Positions 12,020-30,451 of a stretch of DNA of 59,110 bases are shown piece by piece. Both the position numbers and the translations under genes were made by a program. The number at the start of each line of letters is the position of its first letter. Within the stretch, counting starts at the first letter, position 1. This DNA is from Macrostomum lignano (lineage: Eukaryota), in contig NIVC01002666.1 in NCBI GenBank assembly GCA_002269645.1, positions 1 to 59,110 on the forward strand, given 5' to 3'. The notes below the pieces were generated by a model that made no database searches, was not told the origin of the DNA, and worked only from the letters and a program-made list of their open reading frames with translations.

Positions 12020-12238
12020 GCAGCTTCGGCAATTCGGGTCCTGAATCGAGTGGGTAGGCTGCAGAATTCCCTCTGTTTCTTTCTCCTCTTTCTTGTTCAC
12101 CAGTGTCGATTCCGTTCAATATACTTAACTGAGTTATACGGCTGCAATCTGATTGGTTGAGCTGCCGAGAGCCAATCAGATTTTTGGGAGGGAAGAGTTT
12201 CTTACTGCTTTCTGATGGAGTGTTGTAGTTAACTTGTA

Positions 12239-13007
12239 GTGAGTGAGTGAGTGAGTAAGGGAGTGAGTGAGTGAGTGAGTGAGTGAGTGAGTGAGTGAGT
12301 GAGTGAGTGAGTGAGTGAGTGAGTGAGTGAGTGAGTGAGTGAGTGAGTGAGTGAGTGAGTGGGTGAGTGAGTGAGTGAGTGAGTGAGTGAGTGAGTGAGT
12401 GAGTGGGTGAGTGAGTGAGTGAGTGAGTGAGTGAGTGAGTGAGTGAGTGGGTGAGTGAGTGAGTGAGTGAGTGAGTGAGTGGGTGAGTGAGTGAGTGAGT
12501 GGGTGAGTGAGTGAGTGAGTGAGTGAGTGAGTGAGTGAGTGAGTGGGTGAGTGAGTGAGTGAGTGAGTGAGTGAGTGAGTGGGTGAGTGAGTGAGTGAGT
12601 GAGTGAGTGAGTGAGTGAGTGGGTGAGTGAGTGAGTGAGTGAGTGAGTGAGTGGGTGAGTGAGTGAGTGAGTGGTGAGTGAGTGAGTGAGTGAGTGAGTG
12701 AGTGAGTGAGTGAGTGAGTGAGTGGGTGAGTGAGTGAGTGAGTGAGTGAGTGAGTGAGTGGGTGAGTGAGTGAGTGAGTGAGTGAGTGAGTGAGTGGGTG
12801 AGTGAGTGAGTGAGTGAGTGAGTGAGTGAGTGAGTGAGTGAGTGAGTGAGTGAGTGAGTGAGTGAGTGAGTGAGTGAGTGAGTGGGTGAGTGAGTGAGTG
12901 AGTGAGTGAGTGAGTGAGTGGGTGAGTGAGTGAGTGAGTGAGTGAGTGAGTGAGTGAGTGAGTGAGTGAGTGAGTGAGTGAGTGAGTGAGTGAGTGAGTG
13001 AGTGAGT
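12239..13007. repeat. (GAGT)n microsatellite
   Basis: Direct reading; source of the THSL repeat ORFs. Confidence 0.97.
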
Positions 13008-13575
13008 GCTAAATAACAATATGCAGGGCATCTATCCCCAAGTCTGTGCTGCATTCCTCAACCCAATACTAATGCTCAGGCAAAACCTGCTCCAGCAAAT
13101 AGCCACATGCCGCGGCAGTCTGACAACTTTCACCAAGAATTATCCCGCTGATGTCTATAATCCATCAACCTCGGCTGAGACTAATCCGGCGCTACAAAAA
13201 AAGCCGTCAGAATCCGAGTTAAAGAGATTCAAACATTGGCATAAAACCCACACGGCTGAGTCGACTAGGCTGAGCCAACTATGACAGACCGGCCAAGTGG
13301 AAGGTCTCCCAATCTCATCGCTCATTCGTCCTGCGCCATGCAAATGCGCTGTTTAATCAGGCTAAATTGATTCCGAAGTGCATCTTGGCTCTGCTGCCAC
13401 TCCCCTCATCCCCGTTGCCTACTTGCGCTGTGTTTGCGCCTGCCTTTTTAATGCAACATAAACACATCGGGCCAAGGGGGCTCACTGATGATGTCCGCTG
13501 GGAATTCCGCTGCGTTCTCCAACTGCTGGCGCTGAGTGAACCTGTTCGCTGCATCATTGCTGCCTTCCTACTCTT

Positions 13576-14180
13576 GCTCACACTCTCCCTCACAATCTCC
13601 CTCACAATCTCCCTCACAATCTCCCTCACACTCTCCCTCACAATCTCCCTCACAATCTCCCTCACACTCTCCCTCACAATCTCCCTCACAATCTCCCTCA
13701 CACTCTCCCTCACAATCTCCCTCACACTCTCCCTCACACTCTCCCTCACAATCTCCTTCACACTCTCCCTCACAATCTCCCTCACAATCTCCCTCACACT
13801 CTCCCTCACACTCTCCCTCACACTCTCCCTCACACTCTCCCTCACACTCTCCTTCACAATCTCCCTCACAAGCTCCCTCACAAGCTCCCTCACAATCTCC
13901 CTCACACTCACCCTCACACTCTCCCTCACACTCTCCCTCACACTCTCCCTCACACTCTCCCTCACACTCTCCCTCACACTCTCCCTCACACTCTCCCTCA
14001 CACTCTCCCTCACACTCTCCCTCACACTCTCCCTCACACTCTCCCTCACACTCTCCCTCACACTCTCCCTCACACTCTCCCTCACACTCTCCCTTACAAT
14101 TTCTCTCACACTCTCCCTCACTCCTTCACTCTCCCTCACAAGTTTCCTCACAATCTCCGTCACTCCTTCACTCTCCCTCA
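13576..14180. repeat. 12-bp minisatellite (CTCCCTCACA[C/A]T)n
   Basis: Direct reading. Confidence 0.95.
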
Positions 14181-15248
14181 CAATTATCCTTCACAATCTC
14201 CCTCAAAATCTCCCCCACTCTCTCTCTCACTCTCCCTCACACTCCCTCATAACCGTCCCCACTCTCTCCTTCTCTCTTCCTCACACTCTCCGTTTCAGTC
14301 TCCCTCCCATTCTTCCTCTCATACTCCATACCCTGCAGCCCTTTCTCCTTAATCTACCTGCATGTGAATACACTTTTAATTAGAAATGAGAAAAAATTTG
14401 TACAGATTCACAGAAAGGTGAGTTTATTGAAGAATATTTTCGGTTCATAAGTTTCATTAAATACGAGCATCAATGGGAAAGTTAAAAATGCGAGCGTAAA
14501 AGACAAACACGGGAAGCATTTTCAAGATATTATTTCCGCTCTATCTAAGACTCTAATTTAGTTGCTAGCTATTGTTGAACATTATATTTTTATAGGATGA
14601 AACATGCTCTTTTTGCATCAAACATGCAAAGTTTTTCAAGTAAATTTATTTGATCCCACAGCATGCACCTACGTATTAAATTTTTATCAAATTGGCTTTA
14701 TATAAATCTATAGAACATCCATCTAGAGACATTAATTTCATTTTTATCAAAAAAAATTTATTGCAATTACGTCGTTTGCTTAAAAATATTTATCCGATTC
14801 ACTAAGAACTTTTGTTTATCTACACTCACAAAATAGGATATTTATTTTAAATGTTCGTTAGTTTTCGTGCTTATTCGGTCTGGTCAGATATTCGATGTTT
14901 CAACTGTTTTATTTTTATTTTCAGAGACGCAGGTAATACATTTTCATTTTATTTACTTACCTAGATATTCTTGAAACCACTGTCTTGTTTTGTCAAAATG
15001 TTTTGAGAAAAAAATCTAACTTTTAGCGGACGTTTAAATTTATTGAATACAGTCAAAAACTTACCAAATACTTTGGGTAGCTAACAGTTAAAAAAACTCT
15101 AAAATAACAATTTAGTAGGAACTATTAAAACTGGCAAAAAATAATTTATTGCAAATCAAACAAACACTAAGGCATTATTAAAAATCTAATTAAAATATTA
15201 AATTTTATTATATATGACATTTTTCAGGCAAAAAGCAAACAACGAGCA

Positions 15249-15295
15249 ATGACTGAAGAGACCATTGTCTTCCACTTTTACGCGAAGAAGCTTCT
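15249..15295 (+). CDS. SMS: Spermine synthase coding exon 1, 5' part (interrupted by a transposon)
   Basis: Acceptor TTTTCAG at 15227; ATG at 15249 gives MTEETIVFHFYAKKL(L). It joins 17207-17211 in frame once the element and one TTCT copy are removed. Confidence 0.7.
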
Positions 15296-17202
15296 CACAG
15301 CTATCTTGAAGACCAGTTAAGTGACAAAAAAATTGCCCAAAAAACGGGTTGTGTTTTCAAAAACAATGCACCACTAGAAGTTTCTATATAAATTTTCAAA
15401 ATGATTTTGCGAGATATTTTTATTTTATTGCATGTTTTTACTTTTACAATGATTTCTGTGCTGAAATTATAGTATCTGTGGTCTGGTAGTTGAGGGTTAC
15501 TTGTATAATGTATTGCATACGTATAATTTTTGATCAAACATATCAATACATAAATTAGTAAACTTCATTAAATGAAGAATGGTGAATAATATTAGACTGG
15601 GAAGGATGCAGCAACAGAGATGAGACACGTTGTATACTGCAAGGACCCGGAGGGACTCATTGATAGCCTTCTGTACCACTGCTGCATTGAAGAAGGAAAC
15701 TTTGAAGTTAAAATTGGCATAGATGGAGGAGGCAACTTCTTGAAGGTCTGTCTCACTATTGTGCAAATTGGAGCAGAGCAACAACCTAAAACAAAAACAA
15801 GCTATTCTGTTGCCGCATGCAGTTCTCGTTTCTGTGATAGTGGAGTGAAAAAAACTGCTGATCCTTGCAATTGTCGAAGATGTTCGAGAGTCCTACTTCA
15901 ACATCAAGGCTGTCCTGGACCTTCTGAGACTGCAACAGGTACGCTTCAGTCTTGCTGTTGACATGAAGATGGCTAACACACTACTTGGCCTCCAGTGTGC
16001 CAGCAGCAGTCACCCCTGTCCATGGTGCGAGTTGAACTGCAAAGAATTCTGTAGCATGCATCATGAAGTTCCCTTGCGGTCATTTGGCAGCATAAGACAG
16101 AATGCTAATAGCTACCAAGAGCTGGTGCAGCAGACAAGTAGCACAAGGCACTCGGCTGCCAGGTTCAAGAATTGTGTTAGAATGCCGCTGCTTGATTTTC
16201 CAGACAAGACTTTGGTGATCAACGTTGTGCCTCCAATGGAGTTGCACTTGATGCTAGGTATTGTCAATCGGCTGTTCAAGGAGCTTGATTCTCAATTACA
16301 GTCAATCTCCAACTGTACAATACGAGCACAGGACTTTGCTAATCGTTTAAACATCTGGCAGGCACCATATCAAGGTGGGCAGTTTACTGGCAACCACTGC
16401 AGCAAGCTGCTAAACAGTGTCGACTCACTTGAGCAAATGCTGCAAGACTGCGGTGCCATAGCAGCCATGCCTATTGTACAAGCCCTTCGCACCTTTCGTG
16501 AAGTCTGTAGGACTTGTTTTGGACTGGTGCTTCTAGACGGCTACGATGCAGCAATAAAGGCATTTGCTGCGGCCTACAAGGATGTTGGCATTCCTGTCAG
16601 CCCTAAAGTCCATGCTGTCTTTGAGCATGTTGCTCCATTTCTTCGCAACCAGCCGCAAATGCCTGGATCAGCTCTGCATGGCCTTGGATTCTGGTCGGAG
16701 CAGGCAAGTGAGGCTGTGCATGCGGACTTCAGTCGCCTCTGGGACAGCAGCTACAAAGTGGCGAAAACGAGTGCACAGTACAGCAAGCAGCTGCTGAAAT
16801 GCACAATTGTGTACAACTCACGGCACCAGTAAACAAGTTGCTTTTAGTTGATAACTATTTTTAAAGGTAAAGGTGATTTTCTATCAAAATGTTATTGAAA
16901 GTCTAATATTATTCACCATTTTTCATTTAATGAAGTTTACTAATTTATGTATTGATATGTTTGATCAAAAATTATACGTATGCAATACATTATACAAGTA
17001 ACCCTCAACTACCAGACCACAGATACTATAATTTCAGCACAGAAATCATTGTAAAAGTAAAAACATGCAATAAAATAAAAATATCTCGCAAAATCATTTT
17101 GAAAATTTATATAGAAACTTCTAGTGGTGCATTGTTTTTGAAAACACAACCCGTTTTTTGGGCAATTTTTTTGTCACTTGACTGGTCTTCAAGATAGCTG
17201 TG
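15296..17202 (+). mobile_element. Chapaev-type (RAG1/Transib-related DDE) DNA transposon, 5'-deleted, with 303-bp inverted ends and a 4-bp TSD TTCT
   Basis: 15296-15598 is the reverse complement of 16900-17202 (two mismatches seen). Termini are CACAG...CTGTG, with TTCT at 15292-15295 and 17203-17206. Confidence 0.9.
15599..16832 (+). pseudogene. Chapaev-like transposase catalytic core (no N-terminus; +1 A at ~15850)
   Basis: KIGIDGGG (D1), SGVKK|LLILAIVEDVRE, AVDMKMANTLLG...HPCPWC (D2, C2), PPMELHLMLG, PKVHAVFEHV (H2), WSEQASEAVH (E). The order parallels the RAG1/Transib D-D-C2H2-E layout. A run of 7 A shifts the frame. Confidence 0.85.
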
Positions 17203-17206
17203 TTCT

Positions 17207-17211
17207 GTCCG
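17207..17211 (+). CDS. SMS: Spermine synthase coding exon 1, 3' remnant
   Basis: G TCC G|GTGAGA donor; phase 1 matches the next exon. Confidence 0.65.
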
Positions 17212-17299
17212 GTGAGAACTCCGACAAAAATTATTATTTTAGTAGCACATTTGTATGCTTCAAATGATTGCAGTTTCTATTGTTATTGCGTCTTTGCAG

Positions 17300-17423
17300 A
17301 CTCCGAGCTTCTCAACCTGGCTGCCATCGCAATGGAGTCGGACAGCTCTCAGGTGAAAAGTGCTCTGTCTGGCCCTGCTGGCGACGACCTGCAACTGGAT
17401 GTGTTCACAAACGGTGCCAACAA
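17300..17423 (+). CDS. SMS: Spermine synthase exon 2
   Basis: TTTGCAG|AC TCC...; DSELLNLAAIAMESDSSQVKSALSGPAGDDLQLDVFTNGAN; donor AA|GTAAGG. Confidence 0.7.
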
Positions 17424-17498
17424 GTAAGGCTAATTTTTGCGTTGGTGTACAAATACTGAAACATGTACTTTACGTGACTTGTTATTTTTCGTTTCCAG

Positions 17499-17586
17499 GG
17501 TGCTCAATATTCGCCGCTACGAGAGCCAGAATCTGTACGTATTTGACATCCTGGTGATGCGGAGCCGAGTCAAGATTGATCTTGTG
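17499..17586 (+). CDS. SMS: Spermine synthase exon 3
   Basis: TTTCCAG|G; KVLNIRRYESQNLYVFDILVMRSRVKIDLV resembles ANLRIYPHGLVLLDL; donor GTGAGC. Confidence 0.7.
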
Positions 17587-17671
17587 GTGAGCCTCCCGCT
17601 TGGAGTGGAAGTTTTCTAGTTGAACGGGCGTATTTTTTTAAGTTTTACATTACAAAACTTTCTCTTTCCAG

Positions 17672-17742
17672 CTCATTCGACATCTCGAAGAGCTGATTAA
17701 GAAATTCCTGACGGACATTGGTTCTCTGGACCGATTGTACTG
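17672..17742 (+). CDS. SMS: Spermine synthase exon 4
   Basis: CTTTCCAG|CTC; LIRHLEELIKKFLTDIGSLDRLY; donor TG|GTGAGT; phases consistent. Confidence 0.7.
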
Positions 17743-17759
17743 GTGAGTTCACTCTCGGT

Positions 17760-17858
17760 TGGTTAGTTAGTTAGTTAGTTAGTTAGTTAGTCAGTCAGTC
17801 AGTCAGTCAGTCAGTCAGTCAGTCAGTCAGTCAGTCAGTCAGTCAGTCAGTCAGTCAG
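17760..17858. repeat. (TTAG)n/(TCAG)n microsatellite in an SMS intron
   Basis: Direct reading. Confidence 0.9.
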
Positions 17859-17884
17859 CTATCTCTGAGCACTGTCACCCACAG

Positions 17885-18326
17885 CATGCTTGGTCCGATC
17901 CGCCGCGGCGAGGCCCTGTGGCGCTACTTTCCCATGTCTGACGGCCGGATAGTAGAGTTCAACCTCGGCCGCCTAGTGGAGGACAGGCAGACCAAGTATC
18001 AGAATGTGAAGATCTACTGGAGCGAGGTGCACGGTCATGCCATGTTCCTGGACGACGACATAATGCTGGCCGAGAAGGATCAGGAGCCCTACACCCGGGT
18101 TCTGCTGGGCTTGGAGACTGGCAAGCCCGCTAGGAACTGCTACGCCGACAAGGAGATCCTCATTCTCGGTGGCGGCGACGGCGGTGTCATCTGTGAGCTG
18201 CTGAAACAGCAGCCTCGCATGGTCACCATGGTGGAGATTGACAGCACAGTGGTGCAGCTCTGCGCCAAGTACATGCGGGGCGCCTGTGAGGATGCGCTGG
18301 ACACCCTGGAGGGGCCCAACAAGAAG
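17885..18326 (+). CDS. SMS: Spermine synthase exon 5 (aminopropyltransferase core)
   Basis: PIRRG...RYFPMSDGRIVEF, TKYQNVKI, ILILGGGDGGVICELLKQQPRMVTMVEID; donor AAG|GTGAGG. Confidence 0.93.
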
Positions 18327-18354
18327 GTGAGGACTGCATTGAGTCCGTTTCTGT

Positions 18355-19030
18355 TGTGTCCTTTCTCACCTGTCTCTCCGCACCTGTTTCTCCTCACCTG
18401 TCTCTCACCTGTCTCTTCTCACCTGTCTCTCCTCACCTGTCTCTCCTCACGTGTCTCTCCTCACCTGTCTCTCCTCACCTGTCTCTCCTCACCTGTCTCT
18501 CCTCACGTGTCTCTCCTCACGTGTCTCTCCTCACGTGTCTCTCCTCACCTGTCTCTCCTCACCTGTCTCGTCTCTCTCATCTGTCTCTTCTCACGTGTCT
18601 CTCCTCACCTGTCTCTCCTCACCTGTCCCTCCTCACCTGTCTCTCCTCACCTGTCCCTCCTCACCTGTCTCTCATTACCTGTCTCTCTTCATCTGTCTCT
18701 AATCACATGTCTCTCCTTACCTGTCTCTCCTCACCTGTCTCTCCTTACCTGTCTCTCTTCACCTGTCTCTTCTCACCTGTCTCTCCTCACGTGTCTCTCC
18801 TCTCTCATCTGTCTCTTCTCACGTGTCTCTTCTCACGTATCTCTCCTCACCTGTCTCTCCTTACCTGTCTCTCCTCATCTGTCTCTCCTCACCTGTCTCT
18901 CGTCACCTGTATCTCCTTACCTGTCTCTCTTCATCTGTCTCTCATCACCTGTCTCTCCTCACCTATCTCTGCTCACCTATCTCTCCTCACCTGTCTCTTC
19001 TCACCTGTCTTCTCTCCTGTCTCTCACTTA
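18355..19030. repeat. ~14-bp degenerate minisatellite (CACCTGTCTCTCCT)n in an SMS intron
   Basis: Direct reading. Confidence 0.9.
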
Positions 19031-19097
19031 TCCATCTCCATATGCACCCCTAGCTTTTGTCGTTAGTCTTTAGGTTTACATATTCAATAAATTTCAG

Positions 19098-19244
19098 ATA
19101 ATCATTGGAGACTGCCTGGACCACCTGCACGAGTGCATTCAATCCGGCAAGAAGTACGACTACATTATTAACGACCTGACTGAGTTCATGGTTAACAAGG
19201 AGGAGCGCGGATGGAACTACGACTTTGCCACGGATAATTGTCAG
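19098..19244 (+). CDS. SMS: Spermine synthase exon 6
   Basis: ATTTCAG|IIIGDCLDHLHECIQSGKKYDYIINDLTEF...; donor CAG|GTGACT. Confidence 0.88.
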
Positions 19245-20213
19245 GTGACTCCGCGGGGGTTTTAGCATCGCTGCTATTAAAGGGCTCAAGAGCTGCCCAT
19301 TTTGAATGGAATGGAGTCAACAGAAGAAGTAAGGAAGCTAGACGAGTAGTTAGATAATGTTACAAGAAATCTTTGACCCAGTTTAGAAAGCTCAACACTG
19401 TAACAACTGGATGTGAAAAACTGCCGATAAGAAAAACTCGCGCAACAAGTTGGCACGACATAACAACGTGTCAAGGTTCGAAAATGAAAGTTGACACTAA
19501 ATCTATTAGTGTATTTTATCTATTAAACTTATATATGTTCACCTATGCATGTAGACGCACTGCAAGCACAGACGTCACTAATTTAACAGAATTTGACTGT
19601 CCTGCTAAACTAGAAAGTGGGGCGATAAAAATTAATGCGATAACATAGTTCACGATCGGGTGACCGACTTGAAGCCTTGGGGAGGGCGGTTTGAATCGAT
19701 AGTTAAAGAAAAGAAGTACATTAAAAACCTAAGAATTTGACACAGGATAAGGTGCCCCCGGGCATTCACTTTTTGGCCATAGACAGCAGTCCGCCGGCAC
19801 AGGTCCGTGATTTTGGTGAAGAATATTAAAGTCTTGAACAATGAGCAACTCAAGAAGGGGACCAGTGAACATTCCATGCAGGCCCCTCCTGGGCCAGTTT
19901 GGTCCGCCATCCGGACTTTATTTATCTCCCAATAGTTTCTATGGTGTACGGTTCCTGTGTGGTAAAAAAATAACTATTGATTGCCCCTGCCTTATTTGGG
20001 CCAGATGTGCAACCGACAGCTCAGCCGCAGCTATTGCGCGGCGCATCTGAAGGCTGCGTACGGCTGTTCAGTCCAAGGACTGAGGGGTCGCCAAACACAC
20101 CCTCAATTACCCCAGCTAATGCTGGCACCCATTTTACACAGCTGAGTGAACTGAAGCAATGCAGAGTTAAGTCTGCAAGTCTGCAAAAACCCCGTTAATA
20201 TCCTCACTTCCAG

Positions 20214-20408
20214 ATGATGGAGATCGCACTGAAAGCCCTGAAGCCCGACGGCTGCTACATCCTGCGCGGCGGCTCGCTGTCCTACACCCACTTCTGGAGC
20301 TGCTTCGAGGACGACTGCCGCAAGCTCGGCCTGCGGTTCCGTGTCTACGACAGCTACGTGCCAGCTTTCTACGACAAGTACCGATTCTATGAGGTTCGCT
20401 TCGCCTAA
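20214..20408 (+). CDS. SMS: Spermine synthase last exon
   Basis: TTCCAG|MMEIALKALKPDG...YVPAFYDKYRFYEVRFA*. Reconstructed protein is 372 aa; AATAAA at 20436. Confidence 0.85.
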   Translation: MMEIALKALKPDGCYILRGGSLSYTHFWSCFEDDCRKLGLRFRVYDSYVPAFYDKYRFYEVRFA

Positions 20409-21379
20409 TTGTGGCCTGCTTGCTTGGTGGTGACTAATAAACAAAAAATGAGTAGGGACCTTGCTTCTAGTGTGTGTTTTTACTCGGTGAATAAGCACTA
20501 CCAGAATCGTTTTGTGTGATTCTGTTTTTACCGCGGTTTTTTGTGTGTGTTGATTTTTCTTCAATAATGATGGCTTGAGGTTTGGAAAATAAACGTAACA
20601 AAAGCAGAATTATAAAAAATTCAATCTCTTTCTTGTCTTGTGGATCAGTTTTACGAAAGGGTTGATCGCGACTTCGACTGGCTTGTTTTTTGCATCCTTG
20701 ATCTGCCACCAGACACCTTGATGGTTGGCACTGGCATGCTTCTGCTATGGTGGCAAACAACAATTATATAACTATATACTGTGAATCATAATAACAATTA
20801 TAAAAAAGGGGATAATATAGTAACTCTACTCTATGAGCTTAAGTTGACATAATATTCCCAATTACCCCCCCCCTGCTTGTTCTCCCTTATCCCAAGTCCA
20901 ACTCTCGTCACCTTTTTGCCGAACCCAGCCTCCTGGTGTCACTGTGAGCAGAATGACATCATTTGTGTACACAGGTTACTCGGGCTCCACTTTATGAGCT
21001 TCAGTTGACAGGCCCTTTGTCAGCAGACAAATTTTTTCATCACACTGATTCTTTATCGCACTCAGCTAATCTATCTGGCAGACCTGCATTTCATTGAATT
21101 ATCAGATAACTCATTGCATAAGTTGCATAACGTACACTGTATTTGTGTACTTTCCGAATCTGGGGCTCTAAACTGTCGTGACATTTACTACGCTTGTTTA
21201 TTTAATAATTAACTAAACTGTGGCATGATGGCTCCGCCAGGAATGGGCGACAATTATCGCACTGAGCAGGTGATAAGCTAATTAGGGGCACCTTGAGAGA
21301 CAGCCAGTATACAGGCTTCTCAGATCATTGCTAATTGATTTGCATAGCAGCAGGGGTCGGCAAAATTTTCTAGCTCAGG

Positions 21380-23728
21380 GGCCAGACAAGAATTCAGCTC
21401 ATGGCTGTGGGCCAGATAAAGAATTCAGCTCAGGGCTGTGGGCCAGATAAGAACTCAGCTCATGGCTGTGGGCCAGATAAAGAATTCAGCTCATGGCTGT
21501 GGGCCAGATAAGAACTCAGCTCATGGCTGTGGGCCAGATAAGAACTCAGCTCATGGCTGTGGGCCAGACAAGAATTCAGCTCATGGCTGTGGGCCAGATA
21601 AGAACTCAGCTCATGGCTGTGGGCCAGATAAGAACTCAGCTCATGGCTGTGGGCCAGACAAGAATTCAGCTCATGGCTGTGGGCCAGATAAAGAATTCAG
21701 CTCATGGCTGTGGGCCAGATAAAGAATTCAGCTCATGGCTGTGGGCCAGACAAGAATTCAGCTCATGGCTGTGGGCCAGATAAGAACTCAGCTCATGGCT
21801 GTGGGCCAGATAAGAACTCAGCTCATGGCTGTGGGCCAGACAAGAATTCAGCTCATGGCTGTGGGCCAGATAAAGAATTCAGCTCATGGCTGTGGGCCAG
21901 ATAAAGAATTCAGCTCATGACTGTGGGCCAGATAAGAACTCAGCTCATGGCTGTGGGCCAGACAAGAATTCAGCTCATGGCTGTGGGCCAGATAAGAACT
22001 CAGCTCATGGCTGTGGGCCAGATAAAGAATTCAGCTCATGGCTGTGGGCCAGATAAAGAATTCAGCTCATGGCTGTGGGCCAGATAAAGAATTCAGCTCA
22101 TGGCTGTGGGCCAGATAAAGAATTCAGCTCATGGCTGTGGGCCAGATAAGAACTCAGCTCATGGCTGTGGGCCAGATAAGAACTCAGCTCATGGCTGTGG
22201 GCCAGACAAGAATTCAGCTCATGGCTGTGGGCCAGATAAGAACTCAGCTCATGGCTGTGGGCCAGATAAGAACTCAACTCATGGCTGTGGGCCAGACAAG
22301 AATTCAGCTCATGGCTGTGGGCCAGATAAAGAATTCAGCTCATGGCTGTGGGCCAGATAAAGAATTCAGCTCATGGCTGTGGGCCAGACAAGAATTCAGC
22401 TCATGGCTGTGGGCCAGATAAGAACTCAGCTCATGGCTGTGGGCCAGATAAGAACTCAGCTCATGGCTGTGGGCCAGATAAGAACTCAGCTCATGGCTGT
22501 GGGCCAGATAAAGAATTCAGCTCATGGCTGTGGGCCAGACAAGAATTCAGCTCATGGCTGTGGGCCAGATAAAGAATTCAGCTCATGGCTGTGGGCCAGA
22601 CAAGAATTCAGCTCATGGCTGTGGGCCAGATAAAGAATTCAGCTCATGGCTGTGGGCCAGACAAGAATTCGCTCATGGCTGTGGGCCAGACAAGAATTCA
22701 GCTCATGGCTGTGGGCCAGACAAGAATTCAGCTCATGGCTGTGGGCCAGATAAAGAATTCAGCTCATGGCTGTGGGCCAGATAAGAATTCAGCACATGGC
22801 TGTGGGCCAGATAAGAACTCAGCTCATGGCTGTGGGCCAGATAAGAATTCAGCTCATGGCTGTGGGCCAGATAAAGAATTCAGCTCATGGCTGTGGGCCA
22901 GACAAGAATTCAGCTCATGGCTGTGGGCCAGATAAGAACTCAGCTCATGGCTGTGGGCCAGATAAGAACTCAGCTCATGGCTGTGGGCCAGATAAGAACT
23001 CAGCTCATGGCTGTGGGCCAGATAAAGAATTCAGCTCATGGCTGTGGGCCAGACAAGAATTCGGCTCATGGCTGTGGGCCAGACAAGAATTCAGCTCATG
23101 GCTGTGGGCCAGACAAGAATTCAGCTCATGGCTGTGGGCCAGATAAAGAATTCAGCTCATGGCTGTGGGCCAGATAAGAATTCAGCACATGGCTGTGGGC
23201 CAGATAAGAACTCAGCTCATGGCTGTGGGCCAGATAAGAACTCAGCTCATGGCTGTGGGCCAGATAAGAACTCAGCTCATGGCTGTGGGCCAGACAAGAA
23301 TTCGGCTCATGGCTGTGGGCCAGACAAGAATTCAGCTCATGGCTGTGGGCCAGACAAGAATTCAGCTCATGGCTGTGGGCCAGACAAGAATTCAGCTCAT
23401 GGCTGTGGGCCAGATAAAGAATTCAGCTCATGGCTGTGGGCCAGATAAAGAATTCAGCTCATGGCTGTGGGCCAGATAAAGAATTCAGCTCATGGCTGTG
23501 GGCCAGATAAAGAATTCAGCTCATGGCTGTGGGCCAGATAAAGAATTCAGCTCATGGCTGTGGGCCAGATAAAGAATTCAGCTCATGGCTGTGGGCCAGA
23601 TAAAGAATTCAGCTCATGGCTGTGGGCCAGATAAAGAATTCAGCTCATGGCTGTGGGCCAGATAAAGAATTCATCTCATGGCTGTGGGCCAGATAAAGAA
23701 TTCAGCTCATGGCTGTGGGCCAGATAAG
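21380..23728. repeat. 30/31-bp satellite (GAA[T/C]TCAGCTCATGGCTGTGGGCCAGA[T/C]AA[A])n
   Basis: About 75 tandem copies, no unique spacers. Confidence 0.97.
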
Positions 23729-23835
23729 AAAAGAACGGCGAAAGAGTAAAAGATTAGAGATAAGAGAGAGGAAAGGCGAGAGATGGGATCAGAGAAGAGA
23801 TAAGAGAAAAGAGGTGAGAGAAGGGAGAGGAAAGA

Positions 23836-24410
23836 AGAGAGGAGAGGAGAGGAGAGAGGAGAGGAGAGGAGAGGAGAGGAGAGGAGAGGAGAGGAGAGGA
23901 GAGGAGAGGAGAGGAGAGGAGAGGAGAGGAGAGGAGAGGAGAGGAGAGGAGAGGAGAGGAGAGGAGAGGAGAGGAGAGGAGAGGAGAGGAGAGGAGAGGA
24001 GAGGAGAGGAGAGGAGAGGAGAGGAGAGGAGAGGAGAGGAGAGGAGAGGAGAGGAGAGGAGAGGAGAGGAGAGGAGAGGAGAGGAGAGGAGAGGAGAGGA
24101 GAGGAGAGGAGAGGAGAGGAGAGGAGAGGAGAGGAGAGGAGAGGAGAGGAGAGGAGAGGAGAGGAGAGGAGAGGAGAGGAGAGGAGAGGAGAGGAGAGGA
24201 GAGGAGAGGAGAGGAGAGGAGAGGAGAGGAGAGGAGAGGAGAGGAGAGGAGAGGAGAGAGGAGAGGAGAGGAGAGGAGAGGAGAGGAGAGGAGAGGAGAG
24301 GAGAGGAGAGGAGAGGAGAGGAGAGGAGAGGAGAGGAGAGGAGAGGAGAGGAGAGGAGAGGAGAGGAGAGGAGAGGAGAGGAGAGGAGAGGAGAGGAGAG
24401 GAGAGGAGAG
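23836..24410. repeat. (GAGAG)n pentanucleotide microsatellite
   Basis: Direct reading. Confidence 0.97.
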
Positions 24411-25032
24411 GGAGAGAGAGAGAGAGGAGAGAGAGAAGATAAAGAGAGAAGAGGGAAGAGATCTGAGAGACACAAACCTTGAGCGGGTCGGGTAGAGAGG
24501 CTTTGCGGGCCGCATGTGGCCCTCGGGACGGAGTTCGCCGACTCCTGGCATAGCAGAACACACGTGCTGTATTTTAATAACTCTTTTTGGACTCATTTTC
24601 AACTCATTAGTTATAGAAATACGTAGATGATGTGTTACTTTGCAAAGATACTACTGAGCTGCTACTCAGTAGTATCATCACTACTCCCTGCCTGACGACA
24701 AGTTAATTTTCATCAATTAATTTTTATTTGAAACGTACTACTAGAACAATGAAAAATTGAGTATATTCGTAAACATACATGATTGACATTGTCCTTATAA
24801 ATGTCCAGCGGCATTAATCCGCAATAGGCATTAAAAATCAAACCTGCCCCATGGCCATGTAGCCCATGTACATTAACCTTCTGTATTTACCCTTTTTATA
24901 CTTTTCTGATATTAAAATAAACTTTCTATACATGTCGACACGAAGCGAGTAAGACTCAAACTCAAAACTTTGCCAACTTAACTTAATATCATTCATGATC
25001 ATGATCATGACGGATAATTGCAAAAAACAAAC

Positions 25033-25915: not shown

Positions 25916-26561
25916 CTGAAGAGTGAGTTTGGTCAATGAAATATACCCTGAAAAATACTGATTTCCCATGAATCTTTGACCTAACAGAAGTCCAAAAAAG
26001 CTATCCTTGAAATCATATCGCATTGTCTGCATAGCGTACAGGTGTGCTAATTAGTACAGTGATTTTTTGCACCAGGTGGGTACTACAAGAAGGACTAGAA
26101 GCTTAGGGAAGAACATGGCGACTATCCTGCACCTATGAAAAGACTAAAACTAGATAGGATTTATATTTCTCTTCTTTCTCAGTTACTTTTGGTTCATAAG
26201 TGCTTTTTTACCTGCCCATACCTGGCTAAAATAGCTGTACACCTGGAAATTGTGCTGAATTCACTCCAGGGCGCGTCTCTGCAACCCTAATCCTTGTAAC
26301 AGCGTATTTACCTGCTTGTGGCTCAAACTAAATTGAATTTAATATTTGCTTGCATATTGTTCTTTCGGTTTCCATAATCCATAGAAATAAAGACTTTCCG
26401 TGACAATATTTGCGTTCTCCGGGATTTTATTTGGTAATATTCAATAATATTCCGTAAAGTCTTTATGTCTATGGTTTATACGAGATTACACATGCCTTTT
26501 GAGGGAGTTATTTGTATAAATCACGAAAGCCTCAGGCCTCAGGCTCATGTTTAATCTGATA
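25916..26561. repeat. Left outer arm of a long inverted repeat (pairs with ~32184-32821)
   Basis: High identity to the reverse complement of the right arm by eye; differs by a ~35-bp insert and an altered hairpin. Confidence 0.9.
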
Positions 26562-29117
26562 CATAAGCTATTTGGCCCATAGACATATCTCCAGATAATT
26601 TGGCACTTATAGGACAAGGAGGGCAAGTTAATTCCTGTGTTATCTTCAGATAGAAAAGAAAAATAGATAGTGAGCAGTAGCTGCCATCTTTTAATCTGTA
26701 AACGTACAGAAATTAAACCATGCCAAACAATAAGCGCTCCCACGAAGAAAACCGATGTGTGTGCATCTTGTGCTTTCGGAAGGGGGACCGACCGCTGACC
26801 GCCACTCTAGAAGCGCTGGTTGAATGCCATGTGCTGCCAGGCTTCGCTGACCATCGAGGATTTCTGCCTTCCAGTATCTGCTATTCTTGCAGAATCAAGC
26901 TGATGTCGCAAAACAGCCCTGCACCAACACCTCTGCCACCAAGAATGCCCTACGAGCAAGTTATTGCAGATCTGCGCGATCTTCCACCACTCACTCGCAA
27001 ATTCCCCGAGTGCAACTGCTGGATGTGCCATGTGGGATCCAACAGGGCCAACAAGAATGTGGCAGTGTATCACCCCTTAATGCCAGATGAGTCTACAGCA
27101 GGAATCATGACGCCACTTGGTCGCCCTCCAAATAATGCAGCTGGGCCGATGGGAGACAGTGTTGTCAAACGCTGTGAGACGTGCTCATCGCCAGTGGCGT
27201 GTGGATTGAGGCACGAGTGTGGACAGGCGGCAAAGCTGCGCTATCTTGATGCCCTAAGCCCAAACTCAAGGGAGCACGTAGCCTGCGGTCTTCTGCGTGA
27301 GAAGCTGGGTGCAGCCACCTCTTCTGGCTCCTTAGCAACTGTAGCTTGACTTCTGGCACAGGTGGACGCCCACTCCAAGTTCGAGTGGCTGGTACATCAA
27401 CTACTGAGATTGCATCGCTGCAACATAGCACAATGCGGGCCATGAAGACTGCACTGAACCTCAGCACCAGCCAGACGCTACGTGCGGCTCAGGTGATCAG
27501 AGAAACGTCCGGAAGCAAAAAGGCCGTGCAGCCTGGGCTGAAGGAGTTTCTGTTTGCTGAAGATCAGACTGGTGCCAAGTTTTTTGCAACTGAGCGGCTG
27601 CAGTTTTTCTGCAAACAACCCAATGGGCAAGAGAGTGTGATCGAACGGTCTGTCGTGTTCTGCCGGGATGCAAATGCTTTTCTGGCGCACGTCAGTAACT
27701 CGAGAGGCACTGCTGAGATACACCAGAGAGTGAAACTTGCAACTCTTTAGAGGTGTGCGTCAGTGTTACCGTGGATGGCAGAGGATGCACTTCGTCTTCC
27801 CAATTCAACCGATTTATGGACTTCAGGAGTGAAAAAGATCCTCATCCTGGCCCTTGTTGAGGATGTCAGAGAATGCTACCAGAACGTTAGTGTACTAAGG
27901 TCAACCATCGACATTACCTCCATCAACTTCACGTTAGCCTGCGATTTTAAACTCGCCAACATTATTAGCGGGATCCAGAGCCACTCTTCATCGCATCCCT
28001 GCCGGTACTGTGAGGGCAGGCCGCCATGGGAAGTGCCAGCACAAAGGCGGACGCTCGGCTCAATTCGACGCCTTGCAGGTGAGTTTCAGGCAGCTGGTGG
28101 ACACCAGCCTCTAGCCAAAAACTTTGCCAACTGCGTCCAGCCCCCACTGCTACCTGGGAGCGACTCTGCTGAACTCCTGGACCTGGTACCACCGCCAGAG
28201 TTGCACATGATGCTTGGCATTGTAAACCGGCTGCTTGATGCTCTCAATGCAAGCTGGGGAGGCAATAAGGCCTACGAGTGGGCCTATGAAGCAGGCATCT
28301 GCCGGCAGCAGTACCACGGAGGTTGCCTGGAGGGCCTAGCATGCAAGAAGCTCCTCCTGAAGACGGGTGAGCTGTGGAGCGTGCTGCCTGCACACCTAAA
28401 GCTCTACGCAACTGCACTTCAGGACTTCAATGCTGTGCGCGAAGCTTGCTTTGGCCAAAGTCTGGCAGCTGACTTTAGTCTCTACATTGCTCGCTTCCAG
28501 ACAATATGCAGGTACATCGAGCTTCCAGTGACGCCAAAGATGCACGCGCTTTTTGACCATGTGCCAGCATTCTGCAGTAAGTTTGGCAAGGGGCTCGGCA
28601 GCTTCAGTGAACAGCCTGTTGAATCAGCCCACAGTGACTTCGAAGCCACCTGGCAGCGCTATAAGCGCCCCTTAATCATCCTCAATATAGCACGTGTCTA
28701 CTGCAAGCTATTGTCAACCACAATTCATTTCATATCTGAGCCAACTATGCCTTAACTTGTAACTTGCAACTTGCAAGTCACTACTACCCAAGATAACAAC
28801 GAGTAAACTGTTGACAACTTACTGTCAATTAAATTACCGGTTACATAGGATTTGTTAGTATTTTACTAGTTTTAACAAATATTCTAGTTATTTGACTCTA
28901 GTTATTTTACCTGTGTAGTCATTTGCAGCAAACAGGCCCAATGAGCTCTGTTCATTTTTTCTGTCTTTTGCGATAACTAACTCCCTTCTGTAATAGTTAC
29001 TGACTTGGTTTTGATTTTCAGTGCCAGCCAATTGCTGCACTGCTCCAAAAACCATTACAAGGAAAACCTATAAGTGCCAAATTATCTGGAGATATGTAAT
29101 GGGCCAAATAGCTTATG
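26562..29117 (+). mobile_element. Second Chapaev-type transposon, full length but decayed; ~51-bp TIRs
   Basis: TIR CATAAGCTATTTGGCCCAT...CACTTATAGG at 26562-26613 and its reverse complement at 29067-29117. No clean TSD (GATA vs GAAA). Confidence 0.8.
26720..28739 (+). pseudogene. Chapaev-like transposase pseudogene (at least 4 frameshifts)
   Basis: N-terminal Zn motif HEENRCVCILCFRK...LPSSICYSC...CNCWMC, then GRPL, RSVVFCRD, SGVKKILILALVEDV, ACDFKLANII...HPCRYC, PPELHMMLG, TPKMHALFDHV, FSEQPVESAH. Breaks near 27346, 27739, 27818 and 28670. Confidence 0.88.
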
Positions 29118-29145
29118 GAAACCGAAAGAACAGTATGCAAGCAAA

Positions 29146-29340
29146 TACACCATTTTACCTCCTATTTTGAACAAAGTCTTGTTCAAAAGAGAAAAGCAGA
29201 ACTTCAATTCAAACAAAGTCCCTTTCTATTGAAACAGACGAACTTCAATTCAGACTGTCTGTGGCCAAAACTGTCCCCGAATGACGCGCATGCGCAGATT
29301 TGAAATTCAAAAGAAACAAAGTCACATTCTATTTCGACAA
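29146..29340. repeat. Left inner arm of the inverted repeat (pairs with 31980-32179 and with 30015-30127)
   Basis: TACACCATTTTACCTCC...GACGCGCATGCGCAGATTTGAA seen in inverted form at two other sites. Confidence 0.88.
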
Positions 29341-29429
29341 AGGGATAAAACACAACATATCGACGAACATAAGAGTAAAATGAAAAACAGAAACAAGACA
29401 GTGTCAGTTGGCCAACTTGAGACACCTGA

Positions 29430-29900
29430 CCATCAATTGCCTATCCACCAACGCAGCGAGGGACGTATGTAAACACATGGTTGAACCACTCAGTGCACTT
29501 GCCCACAGAGATGCAGCCAATGGTTCTGTCCACCATGCTGTACAGAATGTCTCGCCGATAGGCCGCCATCGACTGATTGCCGTGCTACTCAGCTGTCGGA
29601 GCGATAAAATTTTGCTGGTCTGCTCTCTTCAGAGCGACCTTCCAACAGGAGATTAAGTTCTCCACAGGACTCAAAAATGGACTGTATAATGGAAGCCGCT
29701 TGACCTGAATGGAGTCCGGAATCTCGTAGGCTGCTTTTCCGCTCTCCCTGACCTCACAATCGTGTACGCTGTCGACCTCTTGACTCCAAGTTGGCGCGCC
29801 AGTTGTTCCATGATATCTTCATCGAATTCTGCTTCAAATTCACCGATTCCCCCTTCTTCCAGCAATTCATCGTCTTCTTCAATCTGATCTTCAGCATTCA
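29430..29900 (-). pseudogene. Internally deleted Tc1/IS630-superfamily transposase fragment
   Basis: HTH QLARQLGVKRSTAYTIVRSGRAEKQP is fused near 29725 to C-terminal EIPDSIQVKRLPLYSPFLSPVENLISCWK...CTEWFNHVFTYVPRC. The LPxYSPxLxPxE motif is typical of the superfamily; in-frame stops are present. Confidence 0.7.
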
Positions 29901-30451
29901 TATCGTTTCTTATTGCATTGCGCAACGATTGTACAGTTATGCAGTACAGGAAAAACAAAAAATTAGATTAATGTACTAAAAATGTACTCTCGTATCTAAA
30001 TGTATGTGCAAAAATCTCTGTCGGAATAGAATGTGACTTTGTTTCTTTTGAATTTCAAATCTGCGCATGCGCGTCATTCGGGACAGTTTTGGCCACAGAC
30101 AGTCTGAATTGAAGTTCTTCTGTTTCAAATAAAATCCGATTACTTATTTTATTGACATTTATTGGACTCATTCTGAGCCAGGAAAGCCTAGTCTATGGTT
30201 TAAAGTGCTATAATTCCAGGCACATCAAATGATTTGATGGCCCCAAAAGAAAGAAGTTTGAACCATAGACTAAACAGAGCTAGACAATGTACTTGGATGC
30301 AACAAAAAAACTGTTATTATATACTGTATAACGAAGCAACAAAAAGACAATTTTCTAGCCAAAGTATAGACAATTGGTAGGATTATATAGGAAACATATT
30401 ACGTTTTTTCAATAATAGGCACAAACGTTTGAAATTAAACGTTTCACAAAC

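What the first reader, a model, noticed from the sequence alone, without database searches (positions are those of the whole stretch)
15249..17211. Recent Chapaev insertion splits the first coding exon of spermine synthase
Removing 15296-17202 and one TTCT restores ATG...AAG CTT CTG TCC G|GT, in phase with all downstream exons, giving a 372-aa SMS. With the element present the frame stops at 15318-15320 after 23 codons. Near-identical ends and an exact TSD indicate a young insertion. This allele is either null, rescued from the Met at 17332, or compensated by a duplicate gene, and it implies an active RAG1-related transposase elsewhere in the genome.
Basis: seen in the sequence. Interest (0 to 1): 0.78.

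Follow-up and report, generated by a model that had tools for sequence, protein, structure and literature searches.

The report
Young Chapaev transposon disrupts one SMS copy
In the flatworm Macrostomum lignano, a recently inserted, non-autonomous Chapaev (RAG1-fold) DNA transposon interrupts the first coding exon of one of three near-identical spermine synthase gene copies; the other two copies are intact, so this is an ordinary loss of a redundant gene copy that the public annotation hides.

Summary
A 1,907-bp element (15296-17202) with 303-bp terminal inverted repeats (2 mismatches) and an exact 4-bp TTCT duplication sits in the first coding exon of a spermine synthase gene. Removing it restores a 372-aa protein. 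With it, translation stops after 23 codons.

The window is the whole contig NIVC01002666.1 of Macrostomum lignano DV1. Two other contigs of the same assembly carry the same gene with the empty site AAGAAGCTTCTGTCCG and encode a protein 100% identical to the restored one. This matches the three known DV1 subgenomes. A further paralogue cluster is 83% identical.

The GenBank model for this contig (PAA56078.1) skips the element through a non-canonical "intron", which produces a false Ser-to-Thr change.

The Chapaev assignment holds:
- 4-bp duplication and CAC...GTG termini.
- D, D, C(2)C, LH, H(4)H and E motifs.
- Full-length relatives fold like RAG1/Transib and carry N-terminal Chapa domains matching published Hydra and Aedes Chapaev sequences.

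The copy here lacks that N-terminal third and has a frameshift, so it needed a transposase supplied from elsewhere.

Verdict: real, young and copy-specific, but biologically ordinary. It is a new member of a known kind.

The parts
14837..14935 (+). Upstream non-coding (5'UTR) exon of the spermine synthase gene. The annotated gene range starts at 14888.
   Evidence: tblastn of the 5'-extended GenBank product P0001 residues 1-33. Record range 14888-20408 for Mlig020105g1.
15249..15295 (+). Left part of the first coding exon: ATG to codon 16 (MTEETIVFHFYAKKL L...). Its last 4 nt are the left TSD copy.
   Evidence: The N-terminus is conserved in orthologues and the paralogue.
15292..15295 (.). Target-site duplication, left copy (TTCT).
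   Evidence: The empty sites in L001 and L003 carry a single TTCT.
15296..17202 (+). Non-autonomous Chapaev DNA transposon, 1,907 bp, with termini 5'-CAC...GTG-3'. Its residual transposase ORF is in the same orientation as the gene.
15296..15598 (+). Left terminal inverted repeat, 303 nt.
   Evidence: 2 mismatches against the right arm, at TIR positions 23 and 282.
15318..15320 (+). Premature TAA stop in the SMS frame, 23 codons after the ATG, inside the left TIR.
15620..15853 (+). Residual transposase ORF, part 1. It aligns from about residue 301 of the 702-aa relative P0081 and contains the first catalytic Asp (GIDGGG, codon 15722-15724). The frame is lost in the A7 run at 15848-15854.
15849..16832 (+). 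Residual transposase ORF, part 2 (different frame). It contains the second Asp (15960-15962), C(2)C CPWC (16017-16028), LH (16239-16250), H(4)H HAVFEH (16611-16628), SEQASE with the catalytic Glu (16695-16712), and the stop at 16830-16832.
16900..17202 (-). Right terminal inverted repeat, 303 nt.
17203..17206 (.). Target-site duplication, right copy (TTCT).
17207..17211 (+). Last 5 nt (GTCCG) of the split first coding exon, followed by the donor GTGAGA.
17300..17423 (+). SMS coding exon 2. It contains the next in-frame Met, 17332-17334 (Met29).
17499..17586 (+). SMS coding exon 3.
17672..17742 (+). SMS coding exon 4.
17885..18326 (+). SMS coding exon 5 (start of the aminopropyltransferase domain).
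19098..19244 (+). SMS coding exon 6.
20214..20408 (+). SMS coding exon 7, including the TAA stop.

Best explanation
A cut-and-paste DNA transposon of the Chapaev group inserted at a TTCT target inside codons 16-17 of the first coding exon of one spermine synthase homeologue (Mlig020105g1) in Macrostomum lignano DV1. Chapaev belongs to the CMC/CMCT clade, and its transposase has a RAG1/Transib-type fold.

The element is an internal-deletion derivative. It keeps 303-bp TIRs and the catalytic-core part of the transposase ORF (D, D, C2C, LH, H4H, E). It has lost the N-terminal ~300 residues, including the Chapa zinc-finger DNA-binding region, and it carries a frameshift. A transposase supplied in trans therefore mobilised it (inferred).

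A staggered 4-bp cleavage of the target and gap repair produced the TTCT duplication. The duplication is shown; the mechanism is inferred from the family.

The insertion happened after the three DV1 subgenome copies diverged, because the other two copies have the intact site (shown).

In this copy the reading frame ends after 23 codons, so the copy is most likely a null allele (inferred; no expression data). The worm is not deprived of the enzyme. Two other copies encode a protein identical to the restored one, and a paralogue cluster at 83% identity exists (shown).

The GenBank gene model for this contig is a mapping artefact that conceals the disruption (inferred from its protein sequence).
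For: - Element anatomy: 303-nt TIRs at 99.3%, CAC...GTG termini, exact 4-bp TSD.
- Empty sites: present in NIVC01000568.1 (L001) and NIVC01003655.1 (L003). The BLAST alignments abut with a 4-nt overlap at TTCT.
- Restored product: 372 aa, 100% identical over its whole length to P0001 (g3). The premature stop is shown.
- Identity of the window: the whole contig NIVC01002666.1.
- GenBank model: the product P0134 reads ...AKKLLTDSELL. This can only arise by running into the element's first bases (CTC ACA G) and jumping to exon 2.
- Three copies fit the three DV1 subgenomes S/L1/L2, which are 1.4-2.4% divergent (PMC10733133). The assembly contains 180 Mb of duplicated blocks at >=95% identity (PMC5730564).
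- Transposase family: homologues of about 680-700 aa with invariant D338, D415, C434-x2-C437, L508-H509, H631-x4-H636 and E659/E663. The profile hits only RAG1L 6b40 (6e-4) and RAG1 3jbw (2e-3) in the PDB, with the motifs aligned.
- Fold: the AF2 model (pLDDT 79) matches RAG1, RAG1L and HzTransib in the top 45 Foldseek hits, E down to 4e-13.
- N-terminal domain: zf-AD Pfam hits in 3 of the 17 sequences of alignment A1, and matches to published Chapa domains of Chapaev-1_HM, -2_HM and -1_AA.
- Contrast with an older element: a second Chapaev-like element at about 26.3-29.2 kb is shared with L001 at 97.4%, so it predates the copy divergence.
Against: - No transcript or read data could be examined, so "null allele" is an inference.
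- One GT...AG pair inside the element (15315|15316 CCA|GTTAAG with 17193|17194) would restore the frame with an 11-aa insertion.
- No other copy of this exact family, and no autonomous partner, was seen. The exact-protein look-up found nothing, and the nearest M. lignano protein is only 47% identical with different TIRs.
- The ORF frameshift lies in an A7 homopolymer and could be a long-read assembly error.
- Placement within Chapaev rests on hallmarks and N-terminal domain matches, not on a phylogeny with Repbase reference cores.
- 36% of the assembly length is in chimeric scaffolds. Pooled worms were presumably sequenced (my assumption, not read in a paper), so the insertion could be a polymorphism within the culture.
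Confidence: 0.85

Rival explanations
1. The element-bearing copy still makes functional enzyme. Three routes are possible. The element could be removed from the pre-mRNA as the GenBank model implies. A cryptic intron 15316-17193 could be used, giving a 383-aa protein with an 11-residue insert after Leu16. Translation or SL trans-splicing could start the protein at Met29 (17332).
For: GenBank annotates a full-length product on this contig (P0134). Exactly one internal GT...AG pair restores the frame without stops. M. lignano trans-splices many mRNAs (PMC5730564). Met29 is conserved in the 83% paralogue.
Against: The annotated "intron" cannot have GT-AG ends in any register and introduces a Ser-to-Thr change. 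That is what results when a transcript from another copy is mapped by BLAT with a 0.8 identity threshold (methods). The cryptic donor GTTAAG is unlike all six donors of this gene (GTGAG/GTAAG/GTGAC). Starting at Met29 would remove the conserved N-terminal strand of the domain needed for dimerisation and activity in human SMS (PMC12803844). It would also require bypassing a 23-codon uORF and 1.9 kb of element.
Confidence: 0.1
2. The insertion is an assembly or consensus artefact, or a rare somatic or culture polymorphism captured in one contig, rather than a fixed feature of a subgenome.
For: The assembly is redundant and 36% of its length lies in chimeric scaffolds. The DNA presumably came from pooled animals (my assumption, not read in a paper).
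Against: A misjoin does not create an exact 4-bp duplication flanking perfect CAC...GTG inverted termini at a site that is contiguous in two other contigs. The contig also differs from both other copies at other positions: upstream flank 98.5% and 96.8% identical. So it is a distinct haplotype. Polymorphism within the culture is not excluded, but it would not change what the element is.
Confidence: 0.04
3. The element is ancestral at this site and was precisely excised from the other two copies.
For: Cut-and-paste elements do excise.
Against: Excision normally leaves a footprint. Here both empty sites are exact, in frame, and match the coding sequence conserved in the 83% paralogue and in other phyla. 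An element that knocks out the gene in all copies would have had to persist through the duplication.
Confidence: 0.01

Closest known systems
Chapaev DNA transposons of Repbase, canonical group (Chapaev-1_HM and Chapaev-2_HM of Hydra, Chapaev-1_AA of Aedes)
   Same: 3-4 bp TSD, 5'-CAC...GTG-3' termini, and a DDE core with C(2)C, LH and H(4)H motifs. Full-length relatives of this element begin with the same HEENRxxVCxxC...PxxxCxxC...CxCxxC Chapa zinc finger.
   Different: The copy in the window is an internal-deletion derivative lacking the Chapa domain. Its TIRs are unusually long (303 bp). The host is a flatworm, and I found no paper describing Chapaev elements in Macrostomum.
Transib transposons and RAG1/RAG1L (ProtoRAG)
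   Same: Same catalytic architecture and fold. The profile aligns the second Asp, C(2)C, H(4)H and Glu with RAG1 D708, C727/C730, H937/H942 and E962 (RAG1 residue numbers from my own knowledge). Foldseek finds RAG1, RAG1L and HzTransib as the only strong matches. The terminus CACAGC resembles the RSS heptamer CACAGTG (heptamer from my own knowledge).
   Different: The TSD is 4 bp, whereas Transib and ProtoRAG make 5 bp (from my own knowledge). Sequence similarity to RAG1 is only marginal (E about 1e-3). There is no RAG2-like gene. The family has the Chapa domain, which canonical Transib lacks (PMC4411706).
GarfieldN1_BM and ConanN_AC, non-autonomous Chapaev3 derivatives in silkworm and anole (PMC4079192)
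   Same: Non-autonomous derivatives mobilised in trans. Paralogous empty sites were used to define the TSD.
   Different: Those belong to Chapaev3 (3-bp TWA TSD). This element has a 4-bp non-TWA TSD and retains most of the catalytic core ORF.
Loss of redundant homeologues by TE insertion after whole-genome duplication
   Same: One of three homeologous copies is disrupted while the others stay intact, in a species with documented S/L1/L2 subgenomes.
   Different: Nothing unusual. The affected gene happens to be spermine synthase, which all other sequenced flatworms have lost (PMC12803844).

Membership tests
Chapaev (CMC/CMCT clade) DNA transposons | Target-site duplication of 3-4 bp | tested here: met
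   Exact 4-bp TTCT duplication. It is defined unambiguously by two empty sites. Hallmark as stated in PMC4079192.
Chapaev (CMC/CMCT clade) DNA transposons | Terminal inverted repeats with invariable 5'-CAC ... GTG-3' termini | tested here: met
   The element starts CACAGCTATC and ends GATAGCTGTG. TIRs are 303 nt at 99.3%.
Chapaev (CMC/CMCT clade) DNA transposons | [quoted passage not shown] | tested here: met
   All are invariant in a 17-sequence family alignment and present in the window's ORF: D 15722-24, D 15960-62, CPWC 16017-28, LH 16239-50, HAVFEH 16611-28, SEQASE 16695-712.
Chapaev (CMC/CMCT clade) DNA transposons | N-terminal Chapa zinc-finger domain | tested here: met
   Met for the protein family. 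N-termini of full-length relatives align end to end with the published Chapa domains of Chapaev-1_HM, -2_HM and -1_AA (E 1e-7 to 1e-10 in a 13-sequence database, reference sequences taken from a machine-read PDF). Three of the 17 sequences of alignment A1 hit Pfam zf-AD. The element in the window has lost this region by deletion.
Chapaev (CMC/CMCT clade) DNA transposons | Catalytic core distantly related to Transib/RAG1 | tested here: met
   The profile hits only RAG1L and RAG1 in the PDB. Foldseek top 45 hits are RAG1, RAG1L and HzTransib; the next hit is Hermes at E 0.026.
Chapaev (CMC/CMCT clade) DNA transposons | Phylogenetic placement of the transposase core inside the Chapaev clade with Repbase references | not testable with these tools
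Transib superfamily (sensu stricto) | 5-bp target-site duplication | tested here: not met
   The duplication is exactly 4 bp. The flanking 5-mers CTTCT and TTCTG do not match. The 5-bp rule is from my own knowledge of the family.
Transib superfamily (sensu stricto) | Transposase consisting of the core only, without a Chapa domain | tested here: not met
   Full-length relatives carry a Chapa-type N-terminal domain. Criterion from PMC4411706.
Animal spermine synthase (SMS type) | C-terminal aminopropyltransferase domain closest to human SMS rather than to spermidine synthases | tested here: met
   Pfam Spermine_synth 4e-26. Human SMS 3c6k scores 7e-55, against 6e-16 or weaker for spermidine synthases.
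Animal spermine synthase (SMS type) | Extended N-terminal AdoMetDC-like domain required for dimerisation | tested here: inconclusive
   The protein has about 125 residues upstream of the Spermine_synt_N match. It aligns to 3c6k from residue 50, and its first 12 residues resemble those of lophotrochozoan orthologues. Pfam PF17950 is recorded for several orthologues but not for this protein. No structure was predicted.
Animal spermine synthase (SMS type) | Product is spermine (not thermospermine or spermidine) | not testable with these tools
   Needs an enzyme assay.

The most novel reading that the evidence does not exclude
Macrostomum lignano harbours a currently active Chapaev system: a RAG1-fold transposase with a Chapa domain. 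This subgenome-specific exon insertion and the intact 702-aa, 99%-TIR element on NIVC01000691.1 would be recent products of that system. Because M. lignano is transgenic-tractable, it would offer a living Chapaev transposase for biochemical comparison with RAG1/Transib, and possibly a new transposon tool. I know of no experimentally active Chapaev element.
Probability: 0.35. Interest if true: 0.55.

Novelty: new member of a known kind. Interest (0 to 1): 0.3.

Why it matters
Three modest points.

(1) Annotation. The GenBank product PAA56078.1 presents a disrupted gene copy as intact and carries a false Ser-to-Thr substitution. Transcript-mapping annotation of redundant neopolyploid assemblies can hide such lesions.

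(2) Genome evolution. This is a datable example of a homeologue being inactivated by a transposon soon after the M. lignano genome duplication. The gene is one that every other sequenced flatworm has lost (PMC12803844).

(3) Transposon biology. The copy-specific insertion, near-identical TIRs, and a related full-length element with an intact ORF suggest that Chapaev elements have been mobile very recently in a laboratory model with working transgenesis. Chapaev transposases are distant relatives of RAG1 in both the core and the N-terminal zinc finger.

Tried and rejected
- Pfam scan of the two raw element ORFs gave nothing above noise. The family has no Pfam model apart from sporadic DUF1280 and zf-AD hits.
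- Exact-sequence look-up of the 289-aa element ORF found nothing on record. Copy number and an autonomous partner could therefore not be established.
- The DNA collections offered cover viral, metagenome, prokaryote, phage, plasmid and E. coli sequence. None contains the flatworm genome, so they were not used.
- The closest protein (P0077, 60% identity) lies on a 2.5-kb contig of the unnamed assembly GCA_013332775.1. That contig has no TIRs, so it says nothing about ends or TSD.
- The full-length M. lignano relative on L004 has 216-bp TIRs starting CAGCGCG. It sits in a GTCT-rich microsatellite, so its TSD is ambiguous (GTCT offset by 2 nt). It was not used as TSD evidence.
- I looked for the 83% paralogue inside the window and did not find it.
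- I considered Transib membership and rejected it on TSD length and the presence of the Chapa domain.
- I considered that the annotated gene model proves splicing-out of the element. I rejected this because no register gives GT-AG and the model changes a residue.
- No paper links Chapaev elements with Macrostomum.
Full report
**What is in the sequence**

The region contains a 303-nt inverted repeat, with arms at 15296-15598 and 16900-17202 and only two mismatches. The bounded element is 1,907 bp. It begins CACAGCTATC and ends GATAGCTGTG. It is flanked by TTCT at 15292-15295 and 17203-17206.

Upstream of the element lies ATG 15249 followed by 15 2/3 codons. Downstream lie 5 nt (GTCCG) and a GTGAGA donor.

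Removing the element and one TTCT, then joining six further GT-AG exons, gives a 1,119-nt CDS of 372 codons. The exons are 17300-17423, 17499-17586, 17672-17742, 17885-18326, 19098-19244 and 20214-20408.

With the element in place the frame reads MTEETIVFHFYAKKLLTAILKTS and stops at TAA 15318-15320. The next in-frame Met is at 17332.

**The gene**

The restored protein matches Pfam Spermine_synth (4e-26). Its best solved relative is human spermine synthase 3c6k (7e-55). Spermidine synthases score 6e-16 or weaker.

A database search identified the organism as Macrostomum lignano. The restored 372 aa are 100% identical over their full length to the GenBank product of BOX15_Mlig020105g3.

A paralogue cluster at 83% identity also starts MTEETILFHFYAKRALSD. 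Orthologues from Owenia and Lingula start MTAETISLY and MTANTIMMCF. So 15249 is the genuine start codon and the split exon is genuine coding sequence.

The 5'-extended GenBank products show there is also an upstream non-coding exon near 14837-14935. "First coding exon" is therefore the right description.

**Empty sites and the meaning of three copies**

The window is the entire 59,110-bp contig NIVC01002666.1 of assembly GCA_002269645.1, and its gene is Mlig020105g1. The same gene is present on NIVC01000568.1 (g3, locus L001) and NIVC01003655.1 (g2, locus L003).

In both, the sequence AAGAAGCTTCTGTCCGGTGAG is uninterrupted, and neither locus contains the TIR. BLAST of L001 against the window gives two blocks, ending at 15295 and starting at 17203. 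They overlap by exactly the 4 nt TTCT in L001.

Non-repetitive flanks are 96.8-100% identical among the three contigs. This includes 543 nt of 100% identity to L001 immediately downstream of the element (17203-17745).

This is the pattern expected from the three DV1 subgenomes (S, L1, L2; 1.4-2.4% SNP divergence) described for this line (PMC10733133). It also fits the 180 Mb of >=95%-identical duplicated blocks reported for the assembly (PMC5730564).

The insertion is therefore specific to one homeologous copy and postdates their divergence. A second, degraded Chapaev-like element at about 26.3-29.2 kb of the window is shared with L001 at 97.4%. Older insertions are common to the copies, which makes the contrast informative.

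**The public annotation hides the lesion**

The GenBank product for this contig (PAA56078.1, P0134) reads ...AKKLLTDSELL, where the other two copies read ...AKKLLSDSELL. A Thr at that position arises only if the model reads CTT CTC ACA G, running into the first five bases of the element, and then jumps to exon 2 at 17300.

No register of that "intron" has GT-AG ends (sequence). The annotation pipeline mapped de novo transcripts with BLAT at >=0.8 identity and accepted near-best multiple placements. The simplest reading is that a transcript from an intact copy was laid over this disrupted copy. The model is thus not evidence that this copy is expressed or spliced.

**What the element is**

Its internal 1.3 kb holds a transposase remnant in two frames, 15620-15853 and 15849-16832, joined across an A7 run. 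The frame-corrected 403 aa find a family of about 680-700-aa proteins with no family annotation. This family includes a 702-aa M. lignano protein, P0081, at 47% identity.

The window's ORF aligns only to the C-terminal ~400 residues, so the N-terminal third has been deleted.

In a 17-sequence alignment the invariant residues are D338, D415, C434-x2-C437, L508-H509, H631-x4-H636 and E659/E663 in P0081 numbering. All are retained in the window.

A profile of this alignment hits only four PDB sequences, all RAG1L or RAG1 (6b40 at 6e-4; 3jbw at 2e-3). The second Asp, the C(2)C, the H(4)H and the Glu align to their RAG1 counterparts.

An AlphaFold2 model of P0081 (mean pLDDT 79) has RAG1, amphioxus RAG1L and Helicoverpa Transib as its top 45 Foldseek matches (E 4e-13 to 1.5e-4). 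The next hit, Hermes, is at 0.026. "RAG1-related" is therefore supported by sequence and by predicted fold.

**Chapaev or Transib?**

The literature gives these Chapaev hallmarks:
- 3-4 bp TSDs, invariable 5'-CAC...GTG-3' termini, and C(2)C, LH and H(4)H motifs (PMC4079192).
- An N-terminal Chapa zinc finger, which canonical Transib lacks (PMC4411706; bioRxiv 10.64898/2026.01.24.700457).

The element meets the first three. The full-length relatives open with HEENRxKVCLVCF...LPxxxCxxC...CxCxxC. This aligns collinearly with the published Chapa domains of Chapaev-1_HM, Chapaev-2_HM and Chapaev-1_AA. It does not align with Chapaev3 or with RAG1 itself.

Those reference sequences were taken from a machine-read PDF and compared against a 13-sequence database, so the E-values of 1e-7 to 1e-10 are only indicative.

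Three of the 17 sequences in alignment A1 also hit Pfam zf-AD. This fits the reported ZAD-like nature of the first Chapa finger.

The 4-bp TSD excludes Transib proper. I could not build a tree with Repbase cores, so clade placement is untested.

**How it most likely works**

*Shown:* the element's structure, the duplication, the empty sites, the premature stop, and the intact sister copies.

*Inferred from the family:*
- A Chapaev transposase made elsewhere bound the TIRs, excised the element and integrated it at TTCT with a 4-bp stagger.
- The element cannot supply this transposase itself, because it lacks the Chapa and N-terminal region and is frameshifted. The frameshift sits in a homopolymer and could be an assembly error.

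*Inferred for the gene:* this copy is probably null. Translation would end after 23 codons, 1.9 kb before the next exon junction.

Only one internal GT...AG pair (15315|15316 with 17193|17194) would restore the frame, adding 11 residues. Its donor, GTTAAG, is unlike the gene's six donors.

Starting at Met29 would remove the conserved N-terminal strand of a domain whose role in dimerisation is essential for human spermine synthase activity (PMC12803844). I give rescue about 10%.

**Does an active transposase exist?**

I could not scan the flatworm genome. The exact-ORF look-up found nothing.

A related but different family is represented on NIVC01000691.1 by a 3,368-bp element. It has 216-bp TIRs at 99% and an intact 702-aa ORF (L004 4503-7870). 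This suggests recent Chapaev activity in this genome. Its termini (CAGCGCG...) differ, however, so it is not the obvious partner.

**Comparison with what is known, and verdict**

This is a typical young, non-autonomous insertion of a known transposon group into one redundant homeologue of a neopolyploid.

The new points are limited:
- The host. I found no paper linking Chapaev to Macrostomum.
- The hidden annotation error.
- The hint of recent activity of a RAG1-fold transposase in a tractable model.

The affected gene has some interest, because M. lignano is reported to be the only flatworm retaining spermine synthase. With two identical intact copies and further paralogues, no phenotype is expected.

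Novelty: new member of a known kind. Interest: about 0.3.

Noticed in passing
window 26343-29147 (ORFs 26720-27349, 27346-27750, 27763-28755, + strand): A second Chapaev-like element, more divergent. Its broken ORFs match P0081 over residues 1-678 at 27-32% identity, and it has a Chapa-type N-terminus (MPNNKRSHEENRCVCILCF...). It is bounded by patchy inverted repeats (26343-26382 / 29108-29147; 26583-26613 / 29067-29097). It is shared with the homeologous contig L001 at 97.4%, so it is older than the copy divergence.
   Followed up: partly
L004 4503-7870 (NIVC01000691.1, M. lignano): A full-length Chapaev-family element: 216-bp TIRs at 99% identity, an intact 702-aa ORF (Mlig010790g22, PAA78421.1), and termini CAGCGCG...CGCGCTG. 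It is inserted in a GTCT-rich microsatellite, so the TSD is ambiguous. It is a candidate recently active autonomous element of a different family.
   Followed up: partly
window 15296-15300 / 17300 (GenBank model PAA56078.1): The deposited gene model for this contig bridges the transposon with a non-canonical intron. It reports Thr where the real gene encodes Ser, so a disrupted copy is presented as intact.
   Followed up: yes
window 29229-30128: A MITE-like unit of about 900 bp. It has terminal inverted repeats of about 115 nt (29229-29342 / 30016-30128, 97-98% identical, one indel) and lies immediately downstream of the second Chapaev-like element.
   Followed up: no
window 21379-23730, 18365-19025, 12238-13008, 13577-14318, 23816-24439, 17757-17858: Large tandem arrays surround and lie within the gene: a 30-nt minisatellite x77 downstream of SMS; a 14-nt unit x47 filling SMS intron 5; (AGTG)x193; a 12-nt unit x63; (GAGAG)x124; and a (TTAG/TCAG)n run in intron 4. 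Array lengths differ among the three homeologous contigs.
   Followed up: no
protein P0135 (UniRef A0A1I8IFZ4, 895 aa): A gene model of this SMS known only from UniRef/MetaClust, with no contig on record. It is fused to unrelated upstream sequence and lacks the first coding exon, beginning the SMS part at ...SELLNLAAIAMESD. It may reflect the same or a similar problem at exon 1.
   Followed up: no
NIVC01000568.1 (contig of L001): The 83%-identical SMS paralogue Mlig028958g1 (PAA80753.1) lies on the same 500-kb contig as Mlig020105g3 (PAA80746.1), seven accession numbers apart. This suggests an older local duplication of SMS that preceded the genome duplication.
   Followed up: no
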